This document shows, one piece after another, positions 3,366-61,506 of a stretch of 64,000 nt of DNA; positions within the stretch are counted from its first letter, which is position 1; each line of letters begins with the position of its first letter. Source of the stretch: Octopus sinensis (Eukaryota); assembly GCF_006345805.1 (NCBI RefSeq), contig NC_042997.1, positions 147,684,001 to 147,748,000 of the forward strand, given 5' to 3'. The notes under the pieces were generated by a model. That model saw nothing but the letters and a program-made list of their open reading frames with translations, was not told the DNA's origin and searched no databases. The translations under genes were made by a program, and so were the position numbers.

Positions 3366-3746
3366 GGCGCAGGAGTGGCTGTGTGGTAAGTAGCTTGTCT
3401 ACCAACCACATGGTTCCGGGTTCAGTCCCACTGCGTGGCACCTTGGGCAAGTGTTTTCTACTAAAGCCTTGTGAGTGGATTTGGTAGACGGAAACTGAAA
3501 GAAGCCTGTCGTATATATGTATATATATATAAATATGCGTGTGTGTGTTTGTGTGTCTGTTTGTCCCCTAGCATTGCTTGACAACCGATGCTGGTGTGTT
3601 TATGTCCCCGTTACTTAGCGGTTCGGCAAAAGAGACCGATAGAATAAGTACTGGGCTTACAAAAGAATAAGTCCCGGGGTCGAGTTGCTCGATTAAAGGC
3701 GGTGCTCCAGCATGGCCGCAGTCAAATGACTGAAACAAGTAACAGA
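3366..3746 (+). mobile_element. SINE-A, near full length (tRNA-like head, internal (TA)/(TG) microsatellite, aaaaga-type tail)
   Basis: A-box-like tggctgtgtgg, B-box-like ggttcagtccc, CORE-like ccttgggcaagt; more than 10 homologous copies in the window; lacks the tagcctcgggccgacc segment. Confidence 0.92.
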
Positions 3747-4716
3747 GGGTAATATGGGGTGCTTCAAGCAGAATCACGCCCTTATTAAAACAATCACAAC
3801 AAGGAATTCCACCCGCAATCTACGTGCCACTCGAAGAGAGTGGTAACAGCTCTAGCTAGGTCATTCATGGCATTAGACTTACGTTCTAAACGTGTAGTTG
3901 TTTCAAAATAACACAATACTCCGCAGTTTATATTGTTCTTGTATGCCCAGGTTAAGATAGATGTTTCATTAAATTTTTGTTCTCGTGTGAAAAAGCGTAA
4001 AAGAAAATTTGAAATGGAAACAATTTTAATGCAGAATTTTTAGAGAACCTTTATAATGCATGATTTCTAAAATAGGAAGATATGCTTAATCTATTTTTGC
4101 ATTTATATTTCAAGTATTTACATTCATATTTTAATTTTAAAAGGAAAGAAAGCAGAAACGATTGAAATACTCTTCGCGTTTAAAATGCATCCACCAACGG
4201 AATGAAATTAGTGACGTCGACTGGTCTTTGAAATTGAGTTCTCTCCTTTAAAGTACCGTAGTATGGGAATGTGGAATGCGTGTGTGTGTGTGTGTGTGTG
4301 TGGGTGTGTGTGTGTCTGTGTGTGTGATGAAAGCTCTGAAGCTGCCATGATTACTTTTAAAAGATAAGTAAGGGATTGTAGACAGTCTTTTTATCATAGG
4401 CTTTATGAAGAATGAAAAAGAGTGTACGTCTTCGTTCGAGATGAGCTATTTCAAGATTTAGAATATTTCGAATTTGAAAACTATTTCAACTTCGCTGTTT
4501 TCATGTACATGAATCTCTCTCTCATCCTTCTGAAGATTTCTTTCTTTTTCTTCTTTTTACTTAAAAGATTAATGTAAAACAGATTAGATATGTGCACCAT
4601 CTTTAAAGTGTTGGTAACAACTTCCTAACGCGTAATATGTATGTATAATCTATGTATCGATTGATGTGCGTATGTAGGCATTTTATATATATATATATAT
4701 ATAATATATATATATA

Positions 4717-7154: not shown

Positions 7155-7310
7155 AGGCGCAGGCGTGGCTGTGTAGTAAGTAGCTTGCTTACCAACCACA
7201 TGGCTCCGGGTTCAGTCGCACTGCGTGACACCTTGGGCTTCCGCTATAGCCTCGGGCCGACTAAACCCTTGTGAGTGGATTTGGTAGACGGAAACTGAAA
7301 GAAGCTCGTC

Positions 7311-7346
<36 letters not shown>

Positions 7347-7554
7347 GTGTGTGTGCGTTTGTGTGTCTGTGTTTGTACTCCCAACGTCATTGGCAACTGA
7401 TGTTGGTACGTTTACGGCCTCGTAACTTAGCGGCTCGGCAAAACAGACTGATAGAAAAATACTGGGTTTACAAAGAATAAGTCACGGGGTCGATTTGTTC
7501 AACTAAAAGGCGGTGCTGCGGCATGGCCACAGTCAAATAAAAGAATAAAAGAAT
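7155..7554 (+). mobile_element. SINE-A, full length
   Basis: Head, internal (TA)n(TG)n, right half and aaaagaataaaaga tail all present. Confidence 0.92.
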
Positions 7555-7846
7555 ACAACCCATTAATAATAAACACCAACACCAACAGCAAAAACAAAAA
7601 ATGTAATATATTATGAGAATTTATTTTTGTTTCAGCTGTTTTTCAATATTTAAATATAATTAAGTGCACTGTATTAAAGAAACTTAAGATCTAGTTAACT
7701 TGGAGGTGGGAAAATAAATTATATAAATAAAGAGTCCCATCTGGATTTCAAAGGGAGATTATATGCAATTTTGCACCTCATTCCTCCCCGCCATCTAAAA
7801 AAAAAATAAAATACTGCACTCAATTTTAATAACATAAACACACGTA

Positions 7847-7974: not shown

Positions 7975-8274
7975 GCGCAGGCATAGCCTTGTGATAAGAA
8001 GTTTGCTTCCCAACCACATGATTTCGGGTTCAGTCTCACCGCGTTGCAACTTGGGAAACTCTCTTCAAATATAGTCTCGGGCCCACGAAGGCCTTGTAAG
8101 TAGATTTGTTTTACGGAAATATATATATATATATATAGACGCAGGAGTGGCTCTGTGGAAAGTAGCTTGCTTAGTAACTACATGGTTCCGGATTCGGTCC
8201 CACTGCTTAGCACCTTGGGCAAGTGACCAAAGCCTTGTGAGTGGATTTGATAGAAAGAAACTGAAAGAATCCCG

Positions 8275-8331
<57 letters not shown>

Positions 8332-8371
8332 TGTCAAGCGATGGTGGGGTTTCAAAGACAGATACACAAAC

Positions 8372-8433
<62 letters not shown>

Positions 8434-8640
8434 GTTTGTGTATCTGTCTTTGAACACCCACCATCGCTTGACAATCGATATTGATGCGTTTACGTCCCCG
8501 TAACTTAGCGGTTCCGCGTAAGATACCGATAGAATAAGTACTAGGCTTAGAAAGAATAAGTCATGGGGTTGATTTTCTCGACTAAAGGCGGTGCACCAGC
8601 ATGGCCGCAGTCTGATGGGTGAAACCAATAAGAGATAAAA
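7975..8640 (+). mobile_element. Diverged SINE-A head (7975-8118) followed by a full SINE-A (8138-8640) with an internal inverted duplication
   Basis: Homology to other SINE-A copies; palindrome 8328-8477 within the second copy. Confidence 0.88.
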
Positions 8641-8827: not shown

Positions 8828-9156
8828 ATAAAGGGTAAAGGACTTCTTCGGTAACGAAGGGCCATGAGTTTGCATCTAGATATTTCAGCTCCGATGCTCA
8901 AGTCCGGACAAGATTGTTTGTGGAAGACCAGCAGTCTCTCCTCTCCACGCCACTGATGTTATCCATGCGAAAGGCAAAGGCCGATACAGCTTGGCAACAT
9001 TGACGACGCAACTTATTTCTACAGCTGAGTGAACTGGAGCAACGTGAAATAAAGCGTCTTGCTCAAGTACACAACTGACAACCCGGTCCGGGAATCGAAT
9101 GTACAACCAAAGGATTGTAAACCCGATCCTCTAACCACTGAGCCATGCCGCTTCAC
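8828..9156 (-). mobile_element. SINE-D (tRNA-derived, with cttgagcaagacgctttatttcacgttgctccagttcactcagctgtagaaat central domain)
   Basis: Reverse complement has A box tggctcagtgg and B box ttcgattccc; homologous copy at 41225-41520. Confidence 0.85.
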
Positions 9157-9161
9157 AGTAT

Positions 9162-9647
9162 TATTTTTTTCCACTCTCGGCACAAGGCCCGAAATTTGGG
9201 GGGAGGGAGCCAGTCGATTAGACTGAATCGAGTACGAAACTGGTACTTCATTAATCGACCCCGAAAAGGCAAAGTCGACCGCGGCAGAATTTGAACTTAT
9301 AACGTAAAGACAGACGAAATACCTATTTCTTTACTACCCACAAGGGGCTACACATAGAGGGGACAAACAAGGAGAGATAAACGGATTAAGTCGGTTACAT
9401 CGACTCCAGTTCGCAACTGGTACTTAATTTATCGATTTCCGATGGATGAAAGGCAAAGTCGACCTCGGCGGAATTTGCGCTCAGAACGTAACGGCAGACG
9501 AAATACCACTAAGCATTTCGGCCGGCGTGCTAACGTTTCTTATTTCTTTATTGCCCACAGGGGGCTAAACATAGAGGGGACAAACAAGGACAGACAAAGG
9601 GTTGAGTCGATTACATTGTGCTAACGTTTCTGCCAGCTCGCCGCCTT
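9162..9647 (-). mobile_element. SINE-B carrying two nested B' insertions
   Basis: Head ggcggcgagctggcagaaacg; direct repeats 9527-9540/9618-9631 and 9311-9323/9495-9507 flank segments ending in the B' tail. Confidence 0.9.
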
Positions 9648-10726
9648 CCCTTCACGGTATTATTATGGCAAAAATATATATTCAATAAATTTAGATTATA
9701 AATAATCAATGAAAACAGGAATATAATGTTTTATTTCCTTTGTATTGTTTAAATATATAAATGGATTGAGTACTGTTTTATTTGTTTTCAGTTTCCGGAA
9801 CTTGAATAAGTAATACTTTTGATATATTTGTAGTTGTTGTGGTTGCTTTTATTCTTTAACCCAGATAGACCATTTTGTTTTATTTTCAAAAACAAAATAT
9901 CCGGGATTATATTAATCAATTATTCCATAAACTGGAACGGGTAACTTACATAGATTCGTATTTCAGGTTTTCGGGATCAAGGCCCTAAGTTTATGGGTTC
10001 GATTCATGGACCGGGCAGCGAATTGAATGAACTATTGAACATGGCAGTTCAATTTATGCTCCTTCAGTCTGTATAGCTGTAATTAATATCAAAGTGCTGG
10101 TGCCCTCATCTCTCCATCATGCGGTCATATTCTTTATATTCAGGTCAATGAATAATGGTTGGATAAAGAAATAAGCGGCTCTGGGTCTGTTGTCGATTAT
10201 AGTCTCTTAAAACAATTACCAAAAACACTGTAAATGTTAACAAGTGATACTTGCTTGTGAATGACGGCCGCGATGATATTTTTACAGTGGTACGTGAATA
10301 CATATTTAGCTACTATTTCTAGCAATTCCAAAATACACTTGCAAACTTCATTGTTGATATATTTTTGCCTCCTTAATTTGATTCTTTCGGTGTTATTTTT
10401 GTTTGCTTTTCCTTTTCCGTTTGGTATTTTTACAACATATTTTTCTATTCTGGTTGTTACTGTTGTGTTGTTGACTGTGGCTTAAATATAGAGCGCGTTA
10501 CATGGAGGTCACGCGCTTGCAGTGATGGGGTTGTTGATGACTCGTTGCTCAAGGAAGCAAGTAATTGGATAGTCTTCAGGATATCCTAACGTAGGAAGAA
10601 CAACTGACGGTAGTAGTGGACGAGTAGTATTGACATCTGTCTAGAACACTTTCTGTTATATTATCTAGTAAACACACACACACACAGAAACATAAATATA
10701 CACACACCACACGCAAATATATCTAT

Positions 10727-12302: not shown

Positions 12303-13303
<1,001 letters not shown>

Positions 13304-13338: not shown

Positions 13339-13782
13339 GTTATTATTAGTATTGTTGTTGTTGTTATTGATTGAGAGAGAAGCGCATGCCATCAAAGTGA
13401 CACTAGGGTACAAAAGTACGAAGCCAAATATACCCATCATGAATACCCGGCTGATAAGGGTATACGAGGAACATGCATCACAACCATATGCGCACGACGT
13501 GGTGATCTCATATCAAGATAAACAGCACATGACTTTGCAAGTGGGACCCAGTTAGAATTTTCTTCAGGTTGAGTAGCCCATACCGCTTAAAAAGTCTCTG
13601 GAGAAGGTTTGTTTAAGGATGGTGAACGAAACACCTATGTTTCCAGAGGTGAATTAATCAAACCACAAAGAATTTCTCCCAACACATGGCTATGATGCTG
13701 CCTCACTGCTCCTGCTCATGATCAAAGATGCACATATCGTCAGCCACCAAAGGTTATACTCAACTTGTTATGGTAAAACAAC
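13306..13782 (-). mobile_element. 3' portion of an (AAT)n-tailed interspersed retroelement (probably a LINE 3'UTR or SINE; family not assigned)
   Basis: Reverse complement matches 32510-32985 and 31985-32330 (gatatgagatcacc...catatggttgtgatgc...ctcaataataat). Confidence 0.8.
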
Positions 13783-14554
13783 TTCCAGAAATCCCTTGCT
13801 TTGCAGAGCTACCGGCGGGCACTGCCGGTTCGAGATAAACTCTACAGACACGGAAGTGCTGTCAGTCGCACTTGCCCGAAATGCGCGCAGAGCGACGAAA
13901 CCGTTCTGTACGCATTCGTCCAGTGTCCTTGCATTACTGACTTGTGGAGTTATGTTGAACAGCTGTTATCGCGTGTAGGATGGATCCGGCTATCGGCCGA
14001 GTCCAAAGTGAAGATCGATCCGCCGCTTTCCAATGGTCCGGAAGGGCAGGCAATTTTCCTCTGTCTGATAGCAGTAACGAAAGAGGTTGTATGGCGACTC
14101 AGGTTGAAAGGACTGAAGACAGACAGTTTTCTCTTCGGACAATCACTCATCGACTTTTTCAAATTTCATTTGGAAAGGAAGATGAGGGTGGAGAGAGAAA
14201 TGCTGCCTCCCAGTATATTTGCTAAGAAAAAAGGTGAGTGAATGTAGCGAAAATGACACGGGTGAGTGGACCTACTCTAATAATGCGCCTGTGGGCTAGT
14301 TAATTTGAGAGGGAGAAGGGTGCTCTTCCCAGATTCTCTCAAAGTGTCGAGTCGTTCAGGATTGGTGGGGTACCTGAGCCAACTCCAGGTGGTTACCTCC
14401 CCGCATTTAGGGAACTTTTATTGTTATATTCTCTTGCTGGATAACATTGTTATTCCTTTAATTGTGTACTCGTTGTTTCTGTGTAAACACCTCAAATTCC
14501 ATGTCTACTCTATCGTCCCCTATATGTCGGCCCTAGTGGCTAATAAATGAAATA
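13780..14554 (+). mobile_element. 5'-truncated L1/Tx1-clade LINE: ORF2 C-terminus (zf-RVT-type zinc motif) plus 3'UTR
   Basis: NFQKSLALQSYRRALPVRDKL...CPKCAQSDETVLYAFVQCPCITDLW matches the LPxxxxL...CxxC...ETxxHxxxxC...W pattern (H changed to Y); 3'UTR ends in stem-loop, AATAAA and GAAATA. Confidence 0.88.
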
Positions 14555-15916
14555 ATGGTAATAATAATAATAATTATTATTATTGTTATTATTATTATTA
14601 GTTAGCTTTTATATCAAATCGTACTATTTTTCTTACGTACTTGACACCTATTCTGTTATTGCAGAAATATTCCACAACAAGAGCAATCCAATAATGGGCA
14701 AACCAGCAGGTATCTCATCGTTTGAACTTTTCCACGAATATTCATACACACAAAGTAATTATATACGATCCAAAATGTAACTCAAGCATACACATTGTTA
14801 TACATACACATACAACATTCATGCAGACACACTCGGAACACTTTGAGACATGTTCACATACGCAAGAAAAATACACACACAAAATTACAAATAAAATAGC
14901 ATGCACATACGTACACACATAATCCACTCACATACGCATTCATATTTTGCATGCAAAAACATCGCACACACAAGCTAATACACGGATAAACACGCAAACA
15001 TTCCCAAAATAACGCACACATAGACAAGCACACACACTGTTTGGTCTTTCAGCAATATGCTATTTTGCGAACATATTAAGATCTCCTAGTGCGAAATCGA
15101 TTATATACGAAAATTATAACCTAATGCATTTAATTTACCTGACCTTATTATGCATATGTGTACAAAACATTTTAACCAGTGCCAGAAACAGTTAGAGATA
15201 TTTTTTTTTTCTGCAACGCATAAAATATATACCCGTATTTTGCATTATTTGTATTAAATTATACCGACGCAAACCATCGCTAGTTTCCATGGATTCCACT
15301 GTTTTGCTATATTGTATGCATTTATTTTGTTTTATTGAACGTACACTGTTAGTATCAATTTTACTTGTGTCCAATATTTCCATTCATAGTACGGCTCGAT
15401 CACATTTAGTGTTGGCCAAACATTCATCATCTCTCTGGCGTTAGTTTTCATTCTCATTTATATCCTAGAGATACATACGAATACCTCTAGGCGGTCTTAG
15501 CGTGTTGGCTTTGGTCTAAACAATAACTACAACTACAAAGAGTTAAATACTTTAATGTGTTTTGGCAAGGATTCGAGACGAAGGAAATTCGTCTACGATT
15601 TCTGGCTTGTTTAAAGACCGAGTATTCCATTGGTCTTTGTAAATGGAAGTTTATTTGTTTGTTTGTTTGTTTGCTTGTTACTCTTTCGATGCTTTAATAC
15701 GAAATGTTCGCGATAGTAACGATAAAACTTGTTTTTATATAGTTATTGATACTGTATTCTACGATTCTGAGTGCTAAATGCCGCTGGATATATATTCATT
15801 CAAATTCACCATCAAGTCAAAGATGTGTGGTTAAGAATCTCTCTTTTGTAACCTCGTGGTTTCGGATTCAGCCCCGCTGCGCAACACCTCCTGACTGAAC
15901 TTGGTGTACAGAAACT

Positions 15917-16292: not shown

Positions 16293-16855
16293 AATGGTTT
16301 CAAATTTGGATACAAGGTCAACATTTTTAGGGGAGAGAATACGTCGATCTCAGCGTTCCCCTGATAGTTATTTTGTCGATTTCGATGGGATGAATGGCAA
16401 AGTCAACCTCGGTGGAACTGGAACGCAAAGCCAGAATAAATGTCGCTAAGTGGGCGGGTAAATTCTTTGCTATTCTAGGCATAAGGCCCGAAATTTTGAG
16501 GGAGGAGGCCAGTCGATTAGATCGACTCCAGTACGCAACTGGTACTTAATTTATCGACCCCCAAAAGGCAAAGTCGACCTCGGCGGAATTTGAACTCAGA
16601 ACGTAAAGACAGACGAAATGTCTATTTCTTTACTACCCACAAGGGGCTAAACACAGAGGGGACAAACAGGGACAGACAAACGGATTAAGTCGATCATATC
16701 GACCCTAGTGCGTAATTGGTACTTATTTAATCGAGCCCGAAAGGATGAAAGGCAATGTCGATCTCGGTGGAATTTGAACTCAGAACGTAATGGCAGACAA
16801 AATACTGCTAAGCATTTCGGCCGGCGTGCTAACGTGTCTGCCAGCTCGCCGCCTT
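16293..16855 (-). mobile_element. Diverged SINE-B (16293-16455) plus a SINE-B/B' dimer (16463-16855)
   Basis: Same architecture as 9162-9520; 171-bp B' segment at 16623-16793. Confidence 0.9.
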
Positions 16856-17623
16856 AGTGAACGAGTAAATTAATAAAATGAATATTGCATTGTTTCATAC
16901 TTTTGCGAGACTTTGTAAAGGAGATGAATGAGTACTGTATTATAAAATATATTGCTTGCATAACTTATTCATTTCTGTCAGAGATTTAAATGCAAATGAT
17001 ATTAACTAAATTGAGTGAAAAAACACAACAGCTTGACTGAAAGAATTCTTATAATTTTAGAACCGTAGCAGGGCCGAACGCATTACCACTAACAGAGTGC
17101 CTATAGACCTCTACTATTGGTGTACAGGGATAACATCAGATTTGTATTATAATTGTAGCTGTTAATTTATAAATTGTTACGGCGTTAATTTAATCTGCTA
17201 ACGTTGACGAAGTGTGATACCTCGCTATGCTGGGCATTAATGGAAACAACTTCACTGCTCGTGCTCTGTAGCTCATGAATTATCTATGAAGTGAGATATG
17301 TGTGAGCATAACAAACTATAGTTATATATCTGTTATATAAACACTGGTATTGCCTAATTTACATAACAAGTTACCATACTTTGTCTTTAAAAGGTTTACG
17401 CCTTTAAATAATTGAATATGATGAATAAGATTAATATTTTCTCGAAGGAAATTATTAATATAAAGTGACTTCGCACCATTCCCAACGAAAGGTGAAAATA
17501 AATCATAAACATCGCTCGGTTATTAATACAAATCTACTAAAATATTTTTCATGCTCCTATTGTGAAATCCATAGTCATATTTCCCAACTGCCTCTCTATC
17601 TGTCTCTCGCTCTCACTCGCTTT

Positions 17624-27407: not shown

Positions 27408-28530
27408 AGGGTGGCGAAATGACAGAGTCCTTACTACGCCTTGCAAAACGATTTAGCGGCATTTTGTCCGTTTTTACGTTCTGAGTTCAAATTCTGCCTT
27501 TCTTTCCTTTCGGGGCGTTAAAATAAGTACCAGTCGAACACTGGAGTCGATGCAGTCGACTTACCTCTTCTTGGAAATCGGTGGCCAAAATTTGAGACCG
27601 ATATAATTCTTTATCAGTAAAAATAATGCGTTTCCGGAAGAACAGAAATGATATCATTATTGCCCAGATGCGTGCAAACATCACTACTACACAAGAAGGC
27701 TATATCCAACAACTGAATTAATTATCAAAACTTGACCTGAATTAATTATCAAAAAAAAATATTTCACAATATCCCTAACTCGAGGACTCTGGAAATATTA
27801 GCCATGGATACGGCAGTTCCAATGACAAAGTGGTATATGAAATATTAAATTAAAACATTTTTACAGATTTAAGTGAATACCGAAACTCCAAAAACGAAAG
27901 CTATTTGTATTAGAAAATCAATGTTCCAATGAAACAGATAATATTAGTTTCAAATTTTGGCACAAGGCCAGCAGTTTTGGGGAGAGGGCTAGTCGATCAC
28001 ATAGACCTCAGTGTTCGACTAGTATTTATTTTATCGACCCCGAAGGGATGAAAGGCAAAGTCAACCTCGGCGGAATTTGAACTCACAGCGTAAAGACGGA
28101 CAAAATGCTGGTACAAATTTTGCAAGGCGTGCTATCGATTCTGCCAGATCAACGTCTTGCAACAGAAAATGGCCACCTCTTAGTAATAGTGGCTTTAATA
28201 AAGTATGATTAAGCATATTAGATACCGATATAAATGGCTTGGAATTGCAATCAACCATCTCATGTCTATAGATGAAAAAAAAGAACACTGAAGATTTATA
28301 TACCATATTTAGGATATTGATTTCTAAGTTAGGTACAAGACCAGAAATTTCGAGGGAAGGGGCTAGTCGATTACATCGACCCCAGTGCACAACTGGTACT
28401 TATTTAAAACACACAAAGGATCAAAGGTAATGTCGATCTCAACAGAATTTGAACTCAGAACACAAAGACAGACGAAATGCCGCTAAACATTTTGCCCAGA
28501 ATGCTACCGATTCTGCCAGCTCACTGCCTT
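27408..28530. mobile_element. Three SINE-B copies: 27408-27602 (+), 27943-28146 (-), 28315-28530 (-)
   Basis: Head, ctggagtcgatgcagtcgac-type hairpin motif and ccaaaatttga tail recognisable in each. Confidence 0.87.
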
Positions 28531-29399: not shown

Positions 29400-29975
<576 letters not shown>

Positions 29976-31974: not shown

Positions 31975-32249
31975 ATAGTACTGTTTAGTTCATCATCCTT
32001 AAACAGACCTTATTCAGGCACCTTTTGAGTAGGATGGGCTACTCAACATGAAGAAAATTCTAACAGGGCTCCACCTGCAAGGCCAATCACTGTTTATCTT
32101 GATATGAGATCACCATGCCGCGCACATATGGTTGTGATGCACGTGTCTAGTATACGCTTATCAGTCGGGTAATCATGATGGGTATATTTAGCTTCTTATA
32201 CTTTACCTCATTGTCACTTTGTTGACATGCACTGCTCTTTCACTCAATA

Positions 32250-32317
<68 letters not shown>

Positions 32318-32927
32318 CAATAATAATAAAGTACCAAATGCCTTGATGCAGTAGCAAATGCCTTGATGCAGTAGCAAATACCCTGATGCAGTACAAGGCA
32401 TGGCTTCTGGTCTTAACTGACTGGAAGTGTTATCATGTACGTTGTTTTGTCTTGGTATAAAAATGGGCTACATCAAATATTCTGCTCAATACCACAGATT
32501 TGCTTCTCATTTGTTTGACCTTAACCAGTCGAGCTTGTCCCGTTGTGGCTGATGATATGTGCATCTCTGATCACAAGCAGAAGTAGTGGGGGAGCATCAT
32601 AGCCATTTGTTGAGAGGGATTCTTTGGGATTTGAATAATTCACCTCTGGATACATGGGTATTTTGTTCAACATCCTTAAACAATTCTTATTCAGGGACCT
32701 TTTGAGTGGGATGGGTTACTCAACCAATAGAAAATTCTAACTGGGCCCCACCTGGAAGGTCATGTGCTGTTTATCTTGATATGAGATCACCATGTCGCGC
32801 ACATATGGTTGTGATGTATGTGCCTAGTGTACTCTTATCAGATGGGTAGTCATGATGGGTTATACTGGGCTTCGTATATTTTACCCCAGTGTCCCTTTGA
32901 TGGCATACCCTGCTCCCTCACTCACTC

Positions 32928-38384: not shown

Positions 38385-39075
38385 TGGTGCCGAGCAAAGC
38401 ATTGTAAGTGAATTTGGTAGACAAAAACAGAATTTGGTTGACAAAGTAGACAAAAACAACTTGCTTACCAGCCACATGGTTCCGGGTTCACTCCCACTGC
38501 GTGGCACCTTGGGCAAGTGTCTTCTACTATAGCCTCGGGTCGACCAAAGCCTTGTGAGTGGATTTGGTAGACAGAAACTGAAAGAAGCCCGTCGTATATA
38601 TGTATGTATATATATGTATGTGTGTGTATGTGTGTGTACGTGTGTGTGTCTGTGTTTGTAACCCCAACATCGCTTGACAACCGATGCTGGTGTGTTTACA
38701 TCCCCGTAACTTAGCGGTTCGGCAAAAGAAACCGATAGAATAAGTACTAGGCTTACAAAGAATAAGTCCTGCGGTCGATTTGCTCGACTAAAGGTGGTAC
38801 TCCAGCATGGCCACAGTCACATGACTGAAACAAGTAAAAGAATAAAAGAAAAAGAAAGAATTATGTGTATGTTTCTTTGTGTTTGTCCTCCACTATCACT
38901 TGACAACCGGTGTTGCTTTGTTTACGTCCCATAATTTAACGGTCTGGCATAAGTGAGCAAAGGATTAGTACTAGGTTAGAAAAAGAAGTAACGGGTCCCA
39001 TTTGTTCGACTCAAACCTTGCAAAGTAATGCTCACGCATGGTCGCAGTCCATTGACTGTAACAAGTTAAAGATAT
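38385..39075 (+). mobile_element. SINE-A lacking its first about 25 nt (38458-38860), preceded by scrambled head pieces, followed by a diverged right half (38865-39075)
   Basis: Near-consensus body; local duplications of tttggtagacaaaaaca at 38415-38455. Confidence 0.9.
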
Positions 39076-44271: not shown

Positions 44272-44680
44272 AGGTACAGGTATGGCTGTATGGTAAGAAG
44301 TTTGCTTCCCAACCACATGGTTCCGGGTTCAGTCCCACTGCGTGGCACCTTGGGCAAGTGTCTTCTACTATAGCCTCGGACCGACCTAAGCCTTGTGAGT
44401 GAATTTGGTAGACGGAACCTGAAAGAAGCGTATGTATATATACGTGTATGTGTCGGTGTTTCTCCCCCTAGCATCACTTGACAACACATGTTGGTGTCTT
44501 TACGTCACTGTAACTTAGCGGTTGGGCAAAAGAAACCGATAGAATAAGTACTAAGCTTACAAAGAATAAGTCCTGGAGTCGATTTGTCCGACTAAAGGCG
44601 GTATTCCACCATCGCTGCAGTTAAATGACTGGTACAACTCAAAGAATGAAAGAAGAAAAGAATAAAAGAATAAAAGAATA
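44272..44680 (+). mobile_element. SINE-A, full length
   Basis: Head through aaaagaataaaagaataaaaga tail. Confidence 0.92.
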
Positions 44681-53156: not shown

Positions 53157-53925
53157 ATGGCGGCGAGCTGACAGAAGCGTTGCTTGCCGGGCAAAATGTT
53201 TAACGGCATTCTGTTCGTCTGTGCGTACTGAGATGAAATTCCGCCGAGGTCGACTTTGCCTTCATCCTTTCAGGGTCGATAATTCAAGTACCAGTTACGC
53301 ACTGGAGTCGATATACTCGACGTAATCCGTTTGTCTGTCCTTGTTTGTCCACTCTATGTTTAGCCCCTTGTGGGTAGTAAAGAAATAGGTATTTCGTCTG
53401 CCGCTACGTTCTGAGTTCAAATTCCGCCGAGGTCAACTTTGCCTTTTATCCGTTCGAGGTCGATTAAATAAGTACCAGTTAGGCACTGGGGTCGATATAA
53501 TCGACTTAATCCGTTTGTCTGTCCTTGTTTGTCCTCTCTGTTTAGCCCCTTGTGGGGAGTAAAGAAATAAGCCTTTTTTCCGTCTGCGCATTCTGAGATG
53601 AAATTCCGCCGAGGCCCGCTTTAACTTTCATCCTTTTGAAGTCTATTTAATCGACTTAGCCACTTCCCACTAAATGCTAGCCTTGTGCAAAAAAAAATGA
53701 AAACAATAAGGTGATGAGCTCGCAGAACCTTTAGCACGCCGGGCAATTTGCTTAGCGGCATTTCATCCGTCAGTACTTTCTGAGTTGAAATTCCGCCGGG
53801 ATCGACTTTACCTTTCACCTTTTCGGCATCGACAGAATAATACCATTTGAGCACTAGAGTCGATGTAATCGACTTGTCCCCACCTCCGAAATTGTTGGCC
53901 TTGTATCAAAATCTGAAACCAATGT
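53157..53925 (+). mobile_element. SINE-B/B'/B trimer (53157-53708) followed by another SINE-B (53709-53925)
   Basis: Two B' tails end at 53387 and 53569; third unit ends in the short tail. Confidence 0.9.
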
Positions 53926-54408
53926 TTTAATCATGATTCGTTTATTAAAACTAACTGTACATAAGTTTGGCGTGTTTATTCTATATCCCTGTACAGTTTC
54001 TGTGTTTTATTGTTTTTAATGCAAATGGAAATAGATCTTTCTCACGTTAGAAGGGGTCACTCCGTTTGCTCGATTAACTGAACTATTAACTGAATGACCG
54101 AGGCTAATTATTCCGTAGACATATAAACTCTAAAGGGAATTCTCAAGAAAAATCAGCAAGGGAGTTTGTATGACATACCGTGACACAACTGATGATGGTA
54201 ATTACGGGTACAATCCATCCGACCAGCTTCTGCAGTCTCTGTCTACCCAATTTTTGTCGTTAAGCTTGGGTCATTCCTAAATGCTTGTAAAGATACATTC
54301 CGAAAATTTTACAGTGAAATTGAACCCAAAAGTCCGTGTTAGCGATTTTTAAACATATATATTTTATTAATAATTTGCCATTTTTGTCCTTAATACTCGA
54401 TATTCATA

Positions 54409-54965
54409 AGGCAGCTAAGGCTGCAAGGTGGCTGAATCGTTAGCACTCCGGGCAAAATGCTTCGCAGCATTTCGTCCGTCTTTACGTTCTGAGTTCAAAT
54501 TCCACAAGTGTCGAATTTGCCTTCCATCTTTTCGAGGTCGATAAAATAACTGCTAGTCAAGTACTGGGATTGATGTAATCAACATAGCCCCTCCCTTGGA
54601 AATGCTGGCCTTGTGCCAGAATTTGAAATCAATATTCATAAGACGGTGATCTGGCAGAATCGTTTGCAGGCTGGGCAAAAGGCTTAGTGGCATTTTGTCC
54701 GTCTTTACATTCTGAGCTCAAATTTTATCGCTCCAGTATCGATAAAATAAGTATCAACTAATTACTAGGTTCGATGTAGTGGACTAGCCGCTTTCCCCGA
54801 AACTACTAGCCTTGTATCACAAATAGAAACAAATATTCACTAGGGTGGCTACCTAGCAGAATCGTTACAACACACAGGAAAAATGATTAGCGGCATTCCG
54901 TGAATCTTTAAGTTGTGAGTTCCAATTTCCCTTGAGGTCGACTCAGCCTTGTACCAAAATTTGTG
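54409..54965 (+). mobile_element. Three head-to-tail SINE-B copies
   Basis: Units start after atattca at 54400, 54632 and 54833. Confidence 0.87.
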
Positions 54966-55872: not shown

Positions 55873-56530
55873 TTATACATTCGAAAAACCTGTCCAAGGT
55901 GCTACCTGGACAGCTCGAAAGCAAAGTCACTTACGAAGTGAACATCTTAACTGCACACCCATGACATGCATAATCGGTAGAGTACTTCTCCCCATCCCCC
56001 AAAAGACTCCCCCCCCAAACAACAAAAAACAGTGCAACATCAAGTCAGGTCATAACACACGAAATCACGCAGTTGGCTACTTAAACAATTCTCTTCTATC
56101 ATTCCAGGGTAAATAAAATGAAGTAACAGCAATATACTGGGTTTTATCCAACGACCTTATACTAGCAGTGATGTAACGTTTATTGCACTTAGAAATCACT
56201 AAAAGCTGTTTTGGAGATAATAAAGGACAGAACCTTCCTGTGTTTATTTGATATTAGGATGAAATGTAAATCAGAATCTCTTGCGAAAACTGATTCAGAA
56301 TGCAAAGAAATACAGAACAGAAATAAATAAATAAATGAAGATTGAAAGAAAGAAAGAAAACCCCGTTTACAGCGAAAATAGTTATGTGACACATTGTTGT
56401 TGTGCTTCTTTCATCGTTACATGTTTTTTATTTATATAAGAGTATTTAAAAAAAAAAAATAAACCACCAAATTTGATGACGTTCGGACATGCAACATCCA
56501 TTTTATTTGTTAGCGGATGTTTTAATGTTC

Positions 56531-56920
56531 TTTCTTCTTCTTCTTCTTCTTCTTCTTCTTCTTCTTCTTCTTCTTCTTCTTCTTCTTCTTCTTCTTCTTC
56601 TTCTTCTTCTCGTTCTTCTTCTTCTTCTTCATCTCCTCCTCCTCCTCCTCCTCCTCCTCCTCCTTCTTCTTTTTTTCTTCTTCTTCTTCTTCTTCTTCCT
56701 CCTCCTCCTCCTCCCCTCGCCCCACCATTCTCCCCCCTCATCTATCATCTCCTTAGCCTTCTTCACCTACTCCTTCACCTTCTTCGTGTCATCCTACAGC
56801 TCTACGTCGTCGTCGTCGTCGTCCTCCTGTTTCTTCTTTCCCTTCTTCTTCCTTTCTTCCCCATTTTCTCCCTCTCCCTCTCCCTCTCACCCCCCTCTCT
56901 TTCTCTCTCTTTTTGCCCAC
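56531..56920. repeat. (CTT)n/(CCT)n polypyrimidine tract
   Basis: Direct reading; about 78 bp of pure CTT repeat at 56531-56608. Confidence 0.95.
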
Positions 56921-57319
56921 TTTAAATACTGCCTTTTATTAGTAAGAAATTACTCAAGAAATTCAATAAAACTGTACAACAATCAGCAAATGTAATTGGT
57001 TCACAAAACTACACACACACACCAACACTCACACACACACACACAACACACACACACAAACATATAGCATAAAACTTATATATATGTGATTGCATGTATC
57101 AAAGCATACACACGGTCTCACATTATTTACATATAACGTATTGCGTATGCGTGTACGTATGTATAAACAGCATTAACAATAAGAAAAAAATCAGCAATTT
57201 ACAGAAAGAACGGAAAGCTATAACAAGAAAAAAAAACAAAAACAAAACACACATAACGCAGAGCAACAAGAAAGAAACAAATGTAATGGAAAGTGAAAAC
57301 AAAATCCAACATACACATA

Positions 57320-60359: not shown

Positions 60360-60465
60360 CGGTGGTGGTCGTTGTTGTTGTTGCGGTGGTGGTGGTGGTG
60401 GTGGTGGTGATGGTTGCACTGATGATTAAGTCGATGATGATGATGATAATGATGATGATGATGAC

Positions 60466-60496
<31 letters not shown>

Positions 60497-60583
60497 ATGA
60501 TGATGATGACGATGATGATGACGATGATGATTATTATGATGATGATGATGATGATCTTGATGATAATGATGATGATGATGATA

Positions 60584-60653
<70 letters not shown>

Positions 60654-61506
60654 CGATCGTGATGATGATGATGATTTTCTCTATGTTGGCCATAATCATG
60701 ATGTTGCAGATAATTATGATGACAAAGATTACGACGACCGCGTGGCAGATGATAGGAAATGAGGATGATAATGAACCCGTGATGACGATGACGATTATGA
60801 TGTTGCTGTTGATGATGATAATGATGATGATGATGATATGATGCTGTTGTTGCTGCTGATGATGATTATGATGAGGATGGTGTTGAATACGATAGGGATA
60901 ATGACGAAGGCGATGGTGGTAATGATAATGCTGTTGGTGACGCTGATGATGACGACGACGACGTTTATGATGATGATGTTGATGATGATGATGATGTCGA
61001 CGGCAAAGACAAAGATGACGACGACGACGATGACCATGGTGATGATGTTGATGATGATGTCGACAGCGAAGACATCCATGACATCATCATTATCCCCTCC
61101 TCCTCCTCCTCATCATCATCATCATCAAAATCATCATCATCATCATCATCACTATCTTCGTCGTGACGATGACGATGACAAAAATGATGACGAAAATGAT
61201 AACGATGATGATGAGAAGGAAGCTGAAGATGCTAACTATTATGATCATTATTATTTTCTGGAAGTTGAAAATATTAAAGTTAAAGGTAATGAAATTGATA
61301 ATGTTCATGATGACGATGACGATATTAATTTACTTTTATTACTGGTGATGACGGCGATGACGTTGTTCTTGCTGTCGCTGAAGACAATGAAAAAGATAAT
61401 GACAATGATAGTGTAAATAATAATGATGATGATGGTGATGATGTTGGTGATGCTTTTAGCAATGCTTATGATAATGTTGATGATAATGATGATGATAGTG
61501 ATGATG

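What the first reader, a model, noticed from the sequence alone, without database searches (positions are those of the whole stretch)
14502..14554. SINE-B' tail resembles the 3' end of the Tx1-type LINE in this window, with a covarying stem-loop
Seen: the LINE ends tgtctactctatcgtcccctatatgtc-GGCC-ctagt-GGCT-aataaatgaaata. Five SINE-B' tails (3' ends at 9324, 9541, 16623 on minus; 53387, 53569 on plus) end tgtctgtccttgtttgtcccctctatgttta-GCCC-c(c/t)tgt-GGG(C/T)-a(a/g)taaagaaata. They share TGTCT, GTCCCCT, TATGT, a 4-bp stem/5-nt loop directly before A(A/G)TAAA, and the terminal GAAATA. The second stem pair is G-C in the LINE and C-G in the SINE (a compensatory change); the outer pair alternates G-C/G.U (G-G in one copy). 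Established: stringent LINEs such as eel UnaL2 recognise a 3' stem-loop shared with partner SINEs. Inference: B' is mobilised by an L1/Tx1-clade RT in stringent mode, unlike mammalian L1, which uses the poly(A) tail. Whether this pair is already described I cannot check.
Basis: partly seen in the sequence, partly recalled or inferred. Interest (0 to 1): 0.8.

Follow-up and report, generated by a model that had tools for sequence, protein, structure and literature searches.

The report
Octopus SINE module copied from LINE tail
A roughly 70-base piece found five times inside short octopus-type repeats (SINEs) is a genuine copy of the 3' end of an L1-like jumping gene (LINE) in the same window, an ordinary kind of SINE-LINE partnership whose proposed stem-loop signal is unproven and which in four of the five copies is an internal linker, not a tail.

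Summary
The similarity is well beyond chance: 49/64 identical, z=9.3, 0 of 1000 shuffles. A model built only from the five B' modules finds the LINE terminus as its best non-self hit (E about 5e-4). Three independent LINE copies from other samples carry the same 3' end, and B' is as close to them as they are to each other (72-79%).

- **LINE clade.** The window holds a 0.8-kb 5'-truncated remnant. Its near-full relative has APE+RT+zf-RVT and matches human L1 ORF2p (E=1e-50). It is therefore L1-superclade; "Tx1" was not tested.
- **Stem.** It is 4 bp with one compensatory pair. It is not significant (47/500 shuffles) and not thermodynamically distinctive. The loop differs among LINE copies.
- **Position of B'.** Four of five "tails" are internal, always joined to SINE position 52 within dimers or trimers that appear to have moved as units using another tail.
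- **One true tail.** A 77-nt, 5'-truncated retrocopy with a perfect 14-bp target-site duplication ends exactly at GAAATA.

L1-clade tail-sharing SINE/LINE pairs are already known in plants and algae, so this is a new member of a known kind.

The parts
13777..14554 (+). 5'-truncated remnant of an L1-superclade LINE, comprising the C-terminal end of ORF2 and the 3'UTR
   Evidence: tblastn of P0156 residues 942-1092 to 13777-14229 gives 75% identity, E=7e-66. The 3'UTR 14230-14560 aligns along its whole length to L007.
13801..14241 (+). Open remnant of the ORF2 C-terminus with the CCHC zinc-binding motif (His changed to Tyr in this copy); the stop codon lies at 14239-14241
   Evidence: ORF list. 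Pfam zf-RVT PF13966 at E=1.3e-6, 29.4 bits against a 27.5-bit cut-off.
14488..14554 (+). LINE 3'-terminal segment homologous to the SINE B' module
   Evidence: Hit of the B'-only covariance model R2: 25.1 bits, E about 5e-4, model positions 1-70. 49/64 identity to the B' consensus, z=9.3.
14529..14541 (+). Putative 4-bp hairpin GGCC-ctagt-GGCT
   Evidence: Read directly from the sequence. It appears in the centroid fold at -4.2 kcal/mol, but the fold is no better than shuffles.
14542..14554 (+). AATAAA followed by TGAAATA, the terminal motif shared with B' (A(A/G)TAAAGAAATA)
14555..14612 (+). (TAA)n/(TTA)n run after the LINE end. Other LINE copies end in (ATT)n or (TTA)n.
9541..9617 (-). 77-nt 5'-truncated B' retrocopy ending exactly at GAAATA, inserted into the head of a resident SINE. 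This is the most LINE-like copy (G-C outer pair, AATAAA).
   Evidence: It is flanked by a perfect 14-bp TSD, and the empty site restores an intact SINE head.
9618..9631 (-). Left target-site duplication AGAAACGTTAGCAC of the 77-nt retrocopy
9527..9540 (-). Right target-site duplication AGAAACGTTAGCAC of the 77-nt retrocopy
9324..9393 (-). B' module acting as an internal linker, followed directly by a SINE unit that starts at position 52
16623..16692 (-). B' module acting as an internal linker, followed by a SINE unit that starts at about position 52-54
53318..53387 (+). B' module acting as an internal linker, followed by a B'-type unit that starts at position 52
53502..53569 (+). B' module acting as an internal linker (G-G outer pair), followed by a degenerate SINE unit
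9166..9649 (-). Composite SINE array A1: a head carrying the 77-nt insertion, a B' unit, and a right monomer with the ordinary tail. It is bounded by the TSD AATAATAC(C/T)GTGAAG at 9650-9664 and 9151-9165.
   Evidence: 15-nt TSD, 1 mismatch; unit structure
16465..16856 (-). Composite SINE dimer A2: a full B' unit plus a right monomer from position 52 with the ordinary tail. A weak TSD AATTTAC(T/C)CG flanks it.
   Evidence: The right monomer is 89% identical to that of A1 and shares a 7-nt deletion with it.
53159..53700 (+). Composite SINE trimer A3: U1 is chimeric, U2 is a B' unit from position 52, and U3 is degenerate with the ordinary tail

Best explanation
The last 65-70 nt of the B' units are a captured copy of the 3' end of an L1-superclade LINE family (APE endonuclease, RT, CCHC zinc knuckle).

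That LINE family keeps a recognisable terminal block. It consists of a T/C-rich stretch (TGTC..GTCC), a short G+C hairpin-capable segment, AATAAA and then (A/T)GAAAT, followed by (ATT)n or (TAA)n repeats.

Shown here:
- The homology is real and ends on the same terminal bases in SINE and LINE.
- The block is an integral, ancestral part of the LINE 3'UTR, because it is present in diverged copies from other samples.
- At least one RNA ending in this block was reverse-transcribed and integrated by target-primed reverse transcription. The evidence is a 77-nt 5'-truncated copy with a 14-bp TSD, an end exactly at GAAATA and no repeat tail.

Inferred:
- The block was joined to a tRNA/CORE-type SINE body by template switching. 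A possible switch point is the shared ATGTAA-C microhomology at the body/tail border.
- The LINE protein recognises the block, or part of it, and starts cDNA synthesis at its end. That would make this a 'stringent'-style partnership.
- Most B' modules seen here are no longer tails. An early B' unit became fused head-to-tail to a 5'-truncated ordinary SINE at position 52. One plausible route is an RT jump from the ordinary SINE RNA to the 3' end of a B' RNA.
- The resulting dimer then spread as a unit through the ordinary tail of its right monomer, and trimers arose by unequal exchange.

The 4-bp hairpin is compatible with being part of the signal, but its role is not demonstrated.
For: - **Homology.** Identity is 49/64 (z=9.3, 0/1000 shuffles) to the window LINE and 48/61 (z=5.6) to L012. 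LINE copies are 72-74% identical among themselves, so B' falls inside the family range. The LINE end is the best non-B' hit in the window.
- **Non-circular test.** The B'-only model finds 14488-14554 (E about 5e-4), then the L012 tail, with the L005/6 tails among the weak hits.
- **The block belongs to the LINE.** ORF, 3'UTR and tail are contiguous in L007 and L012.
- **LINE class.** zf-RVT is present. P0156 matches L1 ORF2p at E=1e-50 over APE+RT. Relatives carry PF03372+PF00078+PF13966.
- **Terminal use.** The 77-nt copy has a perfect 14-bp TSD and a restored empty site.
- **Dimers moving as units.** The right monomers of A1 and A2 are the most similar pair in the matrix (0.89) and share a 7-nt deletion. 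A 15-nt TSD bounds the whole A1 array.
- **Stem.** 91.7% of cells pair, against 19-53% when the 3' partner columns are slid by one to three positions. The changes seen are one G-C to C-G swap and three wobble-compatible single changes.
Against: - **Small sample.** There are only six instances in the window and three usable LINE tails from elsewhere. B' copies from other loci could not be fetched (searches returned 0 hits).
- **No shared repeat tail.** B' modules lack the (ATT)n/(TAA)n run that follows the LINE end.
- **Mostly internal.** Four of five modules are internal, so their spread does not need the module.
- **Weak stem evidence.** Covariation is not significant (47/500 shuffles) and predicted folding is no better than shuffled sequence. 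The loop sequence is not conserved among LINE copies. L011 breaks the stem and L005/6 lack its 5' arm.
- **No closer LINE found.** No LINE copy is clearly closer to B' than the window copy: 27-28 of 34 for both over the last 35 nt.
- **Competing partial match.** The 5' half of the module (tgtctgtccttgtttgtcccc) also resembles a TG-rich segment of another abundant SINE (scores 27-34 against 36 for the LINE).
- **Other clades untested.** RTE, CR1 and Dong-R4 LINEs of the same genome could not be checked as better donors.
Confidence: 0.6

Rival explanations
1. The module is only a fossil linker. B' never functioned as a LINE-dependent tail in the copies seen. The dimeric SINE (left unit + linker + right unit) is the mobile element and is mobilised solely through the ordinary tail of its right monomer, by whatever LINE recognises that tail.
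For: Four of five modules sit at the same junction. The right monomers of A1 and A2 are each other's closest relatives at 0.89 and share a deletion. TSDs bound whole arrays.
Against: The 77-nt copy with its own 14-bp TSD ends exactly at the module's last base and differs in sequence from its neighbour. It is therefore an independent retrotransposition of an RNA ending in this module. The fossil-linker view also does not explain why the linker is a LINE 3' end.
Confidence: 0.25
2. The arrays come from Tx1-style site-specific insertion. B' RNAs are inserted by a sequence-specific endonuclease at position 51/52 of resident SINEs, and the 5' junction is resolved by homology. This would produce apparent dimers independently at each locus.
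For: Many Tx1-clade LINEs and the SINEs they mobilise target other transposons or microsatellites (PMC4494074). In array A3 the left unit's 5' part and the right unit share private variants (gagatgaaattcc). In A1 positions 52-64 are identical in the left and right units.
Against: The right monomers at two loci are specifically related rather than random old copies. The one clear independent insertion is at a different site, position 18-31. The LINE copies themselves are followed by (ATT)n or (TAA)n, not by SINE position 52.
Confidence: 0.12
3. The capture ran the other way, or the similarity is a chance product of composition. Either the LINE picked up a SINE-derived 3' end, or the match is a coincidence between T/C-rich and A-rich tails.
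For: The sequences are low in complexity: T/C-rich, then A-rich. CCTTGTG is four-fold over-represented in the window for unrelated reasons, because it occurs in another SINE's core.
Against: Dinucleotide shuffles never reach the observed score, and the independent model hit ends on the exact terminus. The block is present in LINE copies only about 70% identical in coding sequence and from different samples, whereas B' is a minor subfamily of a SINE whose common form has another tail.
Confidence: 0.03

Closest known systems
SINE/LINE pairs with a common 3' tail (Ohshima and Okada; for example eel UnaSINE1/UnaL2 and tortoise Pol III SINE/CR1)
   Same: A 65-70-nt SINE 3' region is homologous to the extreme 3' end of a LINE 3'UTR in the same genome and ends on the same bases. 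A short hairpin-capable segment lies just upstream of the terminus.
   Different: The UnaL2 signal is a longer, experimentally required stem-loop followed by a shared repeat (TGTAA)n. Here the stem is only 4 bp and unproven. The SINE copies lack the LINE's (ATT)n run, and in most copies the module is internal to SINE dimers.
Stringent-type L1-clade pairs: maize/sorghum ZmSINE2/3 with LINE1-1_ZM and Chlamydomonas SINEX-3_CR with L1-1_CR (PMC3472496, PMC3747384)
   Same: An L1-superclade LINE shares about 50-80 nt of its 3' end with a SINE, and a hairpin with compensatory changes is proposed. This shows that not all L1-type LINEs are 'relaxed'.
   Different: Those pairs are in plants and algae and end in poly(A). 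Their hairpins are described as solid structures of about -12 to -18 kcal/mol. This one is in an animal (octopus-like sequence), ends in GAAATA plus or minus (ATT)n, and the hairpin alone is about -4 kcal/mol.
Tx1-Mar LINEs and SINEU in crocodilians (PMC4494074)
   Same: It is an animal Tx1-clade LINE inferred to mobilise SINEs, with copies nested in and next to each other and in other repeats.
   Different: That link rests on shared target preference and shared 5' heads, not on a shared 3' tail. Here the link is a shared 3' end, and Tx1 membership of the LINE was not tested.
Dimeric and composite SINEs (Alu; MD-SINEs of bivalves)
   Same: Head-to-tail fusion of two SINE-derived units that then amplifies as one element.
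   Different: Here the linker between the units is a LINE 3' end and the right unit is 5'-truncated at a fixed position (52).

Membership tests
SINE/LINE common-tail partnership | The SINE 3' region is homologous to the extreme 3' end of the LINE 3'UTR | tested here: met
   49/64 identity, z=9.3. The B'-only model hits 14488-14554 at E about 5e-4.
SINE/LINE common-tail partnership | The homologous block lies at the true 3' end of SINE insertions, which are flanked by TSDs | tested here: inconclusive
   This holds for one of five: the 77-nt copy with a 14-bp TSD. The other four are internal at the position-52 junction.
SINE/LINE common-tail partnership | SINE and LINE share the same terminal repeat | tested here: not met
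   LINE copies are followed by (TAA)n, (TTA)n or (ATT)n. B' modules end at GAAATA with no repeat.
SINE/LINE common-tail partnership | The tail is required for mobilisation by the LINE protein | not testable with these tools
   This needs a retrotransposition assay.
L1 superclade LINE | ORF2 has an APE endonuclease, an RT and a C-terminal CCHC (zf-RVT), and is closest to L1 ORF2p | tested here: met
   The window remnant has zf-RVT. Relative P0156 (75% identical) matches human L1 ORF2p at E=1e-50 across APE+RT, against 4e-22 for R2 over the RT only. Relatives carry PF03372+PF00078+PF13966. The PDB holds no CR1, RTE or Jockey ORF2, so exclusion of those clades rests on zf-RVT and the APE match.
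Tx1 clade | RT phylogeny groups the element with Tx1, Keno, Kibi and Koshi | not tested
   No named Tx1 reference sequences were obtainable. The literature annotates coleoid L1-like LINEs as L1-Tx1 (PMC13282606, PMC8967140).
Tx1 clade | Target-sequence preference | tested here: inconclusive
   Four LINE copies are followed by (ATT)n-type repeats, and the window copy lies between (ATT)n runs. This could be the LINE's own tail rather than a target.
UnaL2-type 3' stem-loop recognition element | A conserved stem supported by covariation | tested here: inconclusive
   The stem has 4 pairs, 91.7% of cells pair, and 1 pair shows a double change. 47/500 shuffles are as good.
UnaL2-type 3' stem-loop recognition element | A conserved loop sequence and a stable fold | tested here: not met
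   The loop is CTAGT, ATAAT or CTTGT in LINE copies. Folding z-scores range from -0.9 to +1.0. There is no Rfam match.
tRNA-derived CORE-SINE (octopus OR-type / tRNA-Core) | A tRNA-like head with A and B boxes plus the CORE domain | not tested
   ARAGORN and Rfam report no tRNA. Box-like motifs and CORE-like sequence were judged by eye and from memory only. The literature says octopus SINEs are mainly tRNA-Core and tRNA-Deu (PMC8967140).

The most novel reading that the evidence does not exclude
An animal L1/Tx1-superclade LINE uses stringent, sequence-specific 3'-end recognition. The signal would be a minimal one: a 4-bp hairpin, then AAUAAA, then GAAAU. The LINE would start cDNA synthesis exactly at the last base without needing a repeat tail. 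Its RT would jump from an ordinary SINE RNA onto the 3' end of a B' RNA, creating the dimeric SINEs that then spread in octopus genomes. This would extend Ohshima's 'ancestral stringent L1' idea from plants to animals and tie part of the octopus SINE expansion to an L1-type LINE.
Probability: 0.25. Interest if true: 0.6.

Novelty: new member of a known kind. Interest (0 to 1): 0.4.

Why it matters
SINEs make up more than a tenth of octopus genomes. They are largely 'unclassified' in current annotations, and I found no LINE partner named for them in the papers I could search. A shared 3' end gives a concrete candidate partner for at least one subfamily. It would also add an animal example to the few L1-clade LINEs thought to recognise a specific 3' sequence rather than poly(A). 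The composite arrays show how a LINE tail can become an internal linker, which matters for anyone classifying SINE 'tails' automatically.

Tried and rejected
- **More B' copies.** Exact-pattern scans of metagenome, prokaryote-genome and viral contig collections gave 0 hits.
- **More LINE loci.** Protein-guided scans of the metagenome and genome collections found none. One look-up had no record. L010 and L013 contigs stop before the tail. The L002, L003 and L011 tails are divergent or interrupted.
- **The ordinary SINE tail as a second LINE-derived tail.** Its tail is ...ctGGCcttgtGCCaaaatttgaaaccaata(att)n. It has the same CTTGT loop with a different stem, but semi-global alignment is not significant (z <= 2.2). 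The local score is inflated by the shared (ATT)n. CCTTGTG is also common in an unrelated SINE core. I kept this only as a lead.
- **Rfam.** Only sub-threshold microsatellite artefacts appeared, with no UnaL2-like element or tRNA match.
- **Extra copies in the window.** The joint model found none. The 18.9-bit hit at 56887-56952 is CT-rich low complexity.
- **Tx1 versus L1 placement.** I abandoned this for lack of named reference proteins.

Full report
**What is at the coordinates**

The quoted string occupies 14502-14554 (+) and is followed by (TAA)n/(TTA)n. It is the end of a short LINE remnant. An ORF remnant runs from 13801 to 14241 and carries a CCHC zinc-binding motif (Pfam zf-RVT, E=1.3e-6, just above the curated cut-off). 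A 313-nt 3'UTR follows. LINE homology starts at 13777, so the copy is 5'-truncated to about 0.8 kb and the window contains no RT.

Their stem and loop letters are as described.

**Is the resemblance more than chance?**

Yes, on three tests.
- Over the last 70 nt the B' consensus and the LINE share 49/64 aligned bases (z=9.3). None of 1000 dinucleotide-preserving shuffles reached that score. Per-copy local scores give z=6.5-8.5 for four copies and 3.4 for the most decayed one.
- When the B' module is scanned against every 100-nt window on both strands, the LINE end is the best match outside B' itself.
- The non-circular test uses a covariance model built from the five B' modules alone. It finds 14488-14554 as its best non-self hit in the window plus 13 fetched loci. 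The score is 25.1 bits (E about 5e-4, rough calibration). The match is aligned end to end and stops on the LINE's last base. The next hit is the 3' end of an independent LINE copy, L012.

**What the LINE is**

A profile search with the C-terminal fragment led to P0156, a 1111-aa near-complete ORF2 that is 75% identical to the window remnant. P0156 matches human LINE-1 ORF2p at E=1e-50 across the endonuclease and RT. By comparison, R2 proteins match at E=4e-22 and only over the RT. Relatives carry Exo_endo_phos, RVT_1 and zf-RVT.

This places the element in the L1 superclade. Whether it is 'Tx1-type' could not be tested, because no named Tx1 references were obtainable. The literature annotates the L1-like LINEs of octopus and other coleoids as L1-Tx1 (PMC13282606, PMC8967140). 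One related fragment (L008) comes from an octopus metatranscriptome, SRR3401912 (PMC11662614).

**The tail is an ancestral part of the LINE**

Contigs encoding related C-termini gave three further 3' ends.
- L007 ends ...cgtcGGTCataatGGCCaataaattaaatt followed by attatt....
- L012 ends ...atgtttccgGGCCcttgtGGCCaataaaagaaatc followed by (att)n.
- L005/L006 end ...ctctatcgttcccccggtggaaaataag followed by (tta)n, with the 5' arm deleted.

The whole 3'UTR of the window copy aligns with L007. LINE tails are 72-74% identical to each other, and B' is 77-79% identical to two of them. B' therefore sits inside the LINE family's own diversity. No LINE copy is clearly closer to B' than the window copy: both give 27-28 of 34 over the last 35 nt.

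**The stem-loop**

All intact LINE tails and B' copies can form a 4-bp stem at the same place, directly before A(A/G)TAAA. Across nine sequences 91.7% of cells pair, against 19-53% when the 3' partner columns are slid. One pair shows a double change (G-C in LINEs, C-G in B'). The single changes are wobble-compatible, with two exceptions (L011 and the 53569 copy).

However, 47 of 500 column shuffles do as well. Predicted folding energies of the 70-nt tails are no better than shuffled sequence (z from -0.9 to +1.0). The loop differs among LINE copies. The double change is also a single event at the origin of B'. The hairpin is compatible with a signal but is not evidence for one.

**B' is mostly not a tail**

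The SINE body (positions 1-170) is shared with a much commoner subfamily, with at least 15 copies in the window. That subfamily's tail is ...ctGGCcttgtGCCaaaatttgaaaccaata(att)n.

Every B' module is followed at once by another SINE piece.
- Four times the junction is the same, GAAATA|GGTATTTCG, at SINE position 52. This gives dimers (16856-16465) and trimers (9649-9166; 53159-53700), each ending in a unit with the ordinary tail.
- The right-hand monomers at 9322 and 16619 are the most similar pair among all units (0.89). They share a 7-nt deletion and other diagnostic bases.
- A 15-nt TSD, AATAATAC(C/T)GTGAAG, bounds the whole 9649-9166 array.

This favours a dimeric element that moved as a unit through its right-hand tail, with B' as its internal linker.

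The third locus is older and messier. Its left unit is chimeric and shares private variants with its right unit. That leaves room for an insertion-into-SINE model.

**One module is a true 3' end**

The copy at 9541-9617 (-) is a 77-nt fragment corresponding to SINE positions of about 158-234. It sits between perfect 14-bp direct repeats, AGAAACGTTAGCAC. Removing it and one repeat restores an intact SINE head. It differs in sequence from the adjacent B' unit, so it is not a local duplication.

A 5'-truncated insert with a TSD is the signature of target-primed reverse transcription. An RNA ending in this block was therefore mobilised, with cDNA synthesis starting at or next to the final A of GAAATA and without an (ATT)n tail. 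This copy is also the most LINE-like, with a G-C outer pair and AATAAA.

**Most likely mechanism**

- Shown: homology, the shared terminus, the ancestral position of the block in the LINE 3'UTR, and one TPRT event using the block as a 3' end.
- Inferred: the block was joined to the SINE body by template switching. The LINE protein recognises it in a stringent-style partnership. An RT jump, or an insertion, fused a B' unit to a truncated ordinary SINE, and the dimer then amplified.

**Comparison with what is known**

Shared-tail SINE/LINE pairs are a textbook phenomenon. L1-clade examples with a hairpin and compensatory changes are published for maize and sorghum (ZmSINE2/3 with LINE1-1_ZM) and for Chlamydomonas (PMC3472496, PMC3747384). 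Tx1-clade LINEs are inferred to mobilise SINEU in crocodilians, from shared targets rather than shared tails (PMC4494074).

I found no described octopus SINE/LINE pair in the searchable papers. Recent octopus annotations leave most SINE families unclassified (PMC13282606). Repbase and Dfam could not be checked.

**Verdict**

This is a real and modestly interesting SINE-LINE tail relationship, and a new member of a known kind. The stem-loop and 'stringent' claims remain hypotheses, and the word 'tail' fits only one of the five copies.

Noticed in passing
window 9324/9323, 16623/16622, 53387/53388, 53569/53570: The recurrent junction reads GAAATA-GG-TATTTC. The last six bases of the B' module are therefore the reverse complement of SINE positions 54-59 just across the junction, forming a 6-nt inverted repeat. 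It could be chance, inherited from one founding event, or a clue to how the fusion arose.
   Followed up: partly
window 13366-13781 (+); 32330-32924 (-); 31982-32248 (-): An unclassified repeat of about 600 bp ('Rep-X') has copies that begin and end in (ATT)n. At 13781 a 3'-truncated copy abuts the 5'-truncated LINE remnant, and the pair lies between (ATT)n runs. This looks like a chimeric retrocopy made by template switching, or an insertion into an (ATT)n tract.
   Followed up: partly
window about 3380-3800, 7180-7600, 8150-8500, 12330-12500, 13082-13300, 29700-29906 (-), 38460-38900, 44300-44500: A second abundant composite SINE is present. It has a tRNA-like head (ggcgcaggagtggctgtgtggtaag...ggttcagtccc) and a Deu-like core containing CCTTGTGAGTGG. 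An internal (TA)n(TG)n microsatellite follows, then a second half starting tgtctgtgtttgtccccc and ending ...gtaaaagaataaaagaa(att)n. Its TG-rich segment resembles the 5' half of the B' module, and its end resembles the LINE's AATAAAAGAAAT.
   Followed up: partly
ordinary SINE tails, e.g. window 27940-27990 (-), 53880-53930 (+), 54590-54640 (+): The common SINE tail has the same CTTGT loop as B' and L012 but a different 4-bp stem (TGGC/GCCA). It is followed by an A-rich stretch, GAAAC and then (ATT)n. If it is homologous to the LINE tail, three of the four stem pairs would show double changes across the three lineages. Homology is not statistically supported.
   Followed up: partly
protein P0211: A 466-aa protein labelled in NCBI as 'MAG: zinc-binding domain-containing protein [Herbaspirillum sp.]' is 69% identical to this LINE's ORF2 C-terminus. 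It is probably host (cephalopod) DNA binned into a bacterial metagenome-assembled genome.
   Followed up: no
window about 9080-9150 (-): Directly after the TSD of array A1 lies a different tRNA-like element (gcggcatggctcagtggttagaggatcgggtttacaatcc...ttcgattcccggaccggg). ARAGORN does not call it a tRNA.
   Followed up: no
window 56470-57000 and 60360-61420: These are long low-complexity tracts, (TCC/TCT)n-like and (ATG/ATT)n-like, that create spurious ORFs of 150-190 aa. One of them gave the only marginal extra hit of the tail model.
   Followed up: yes
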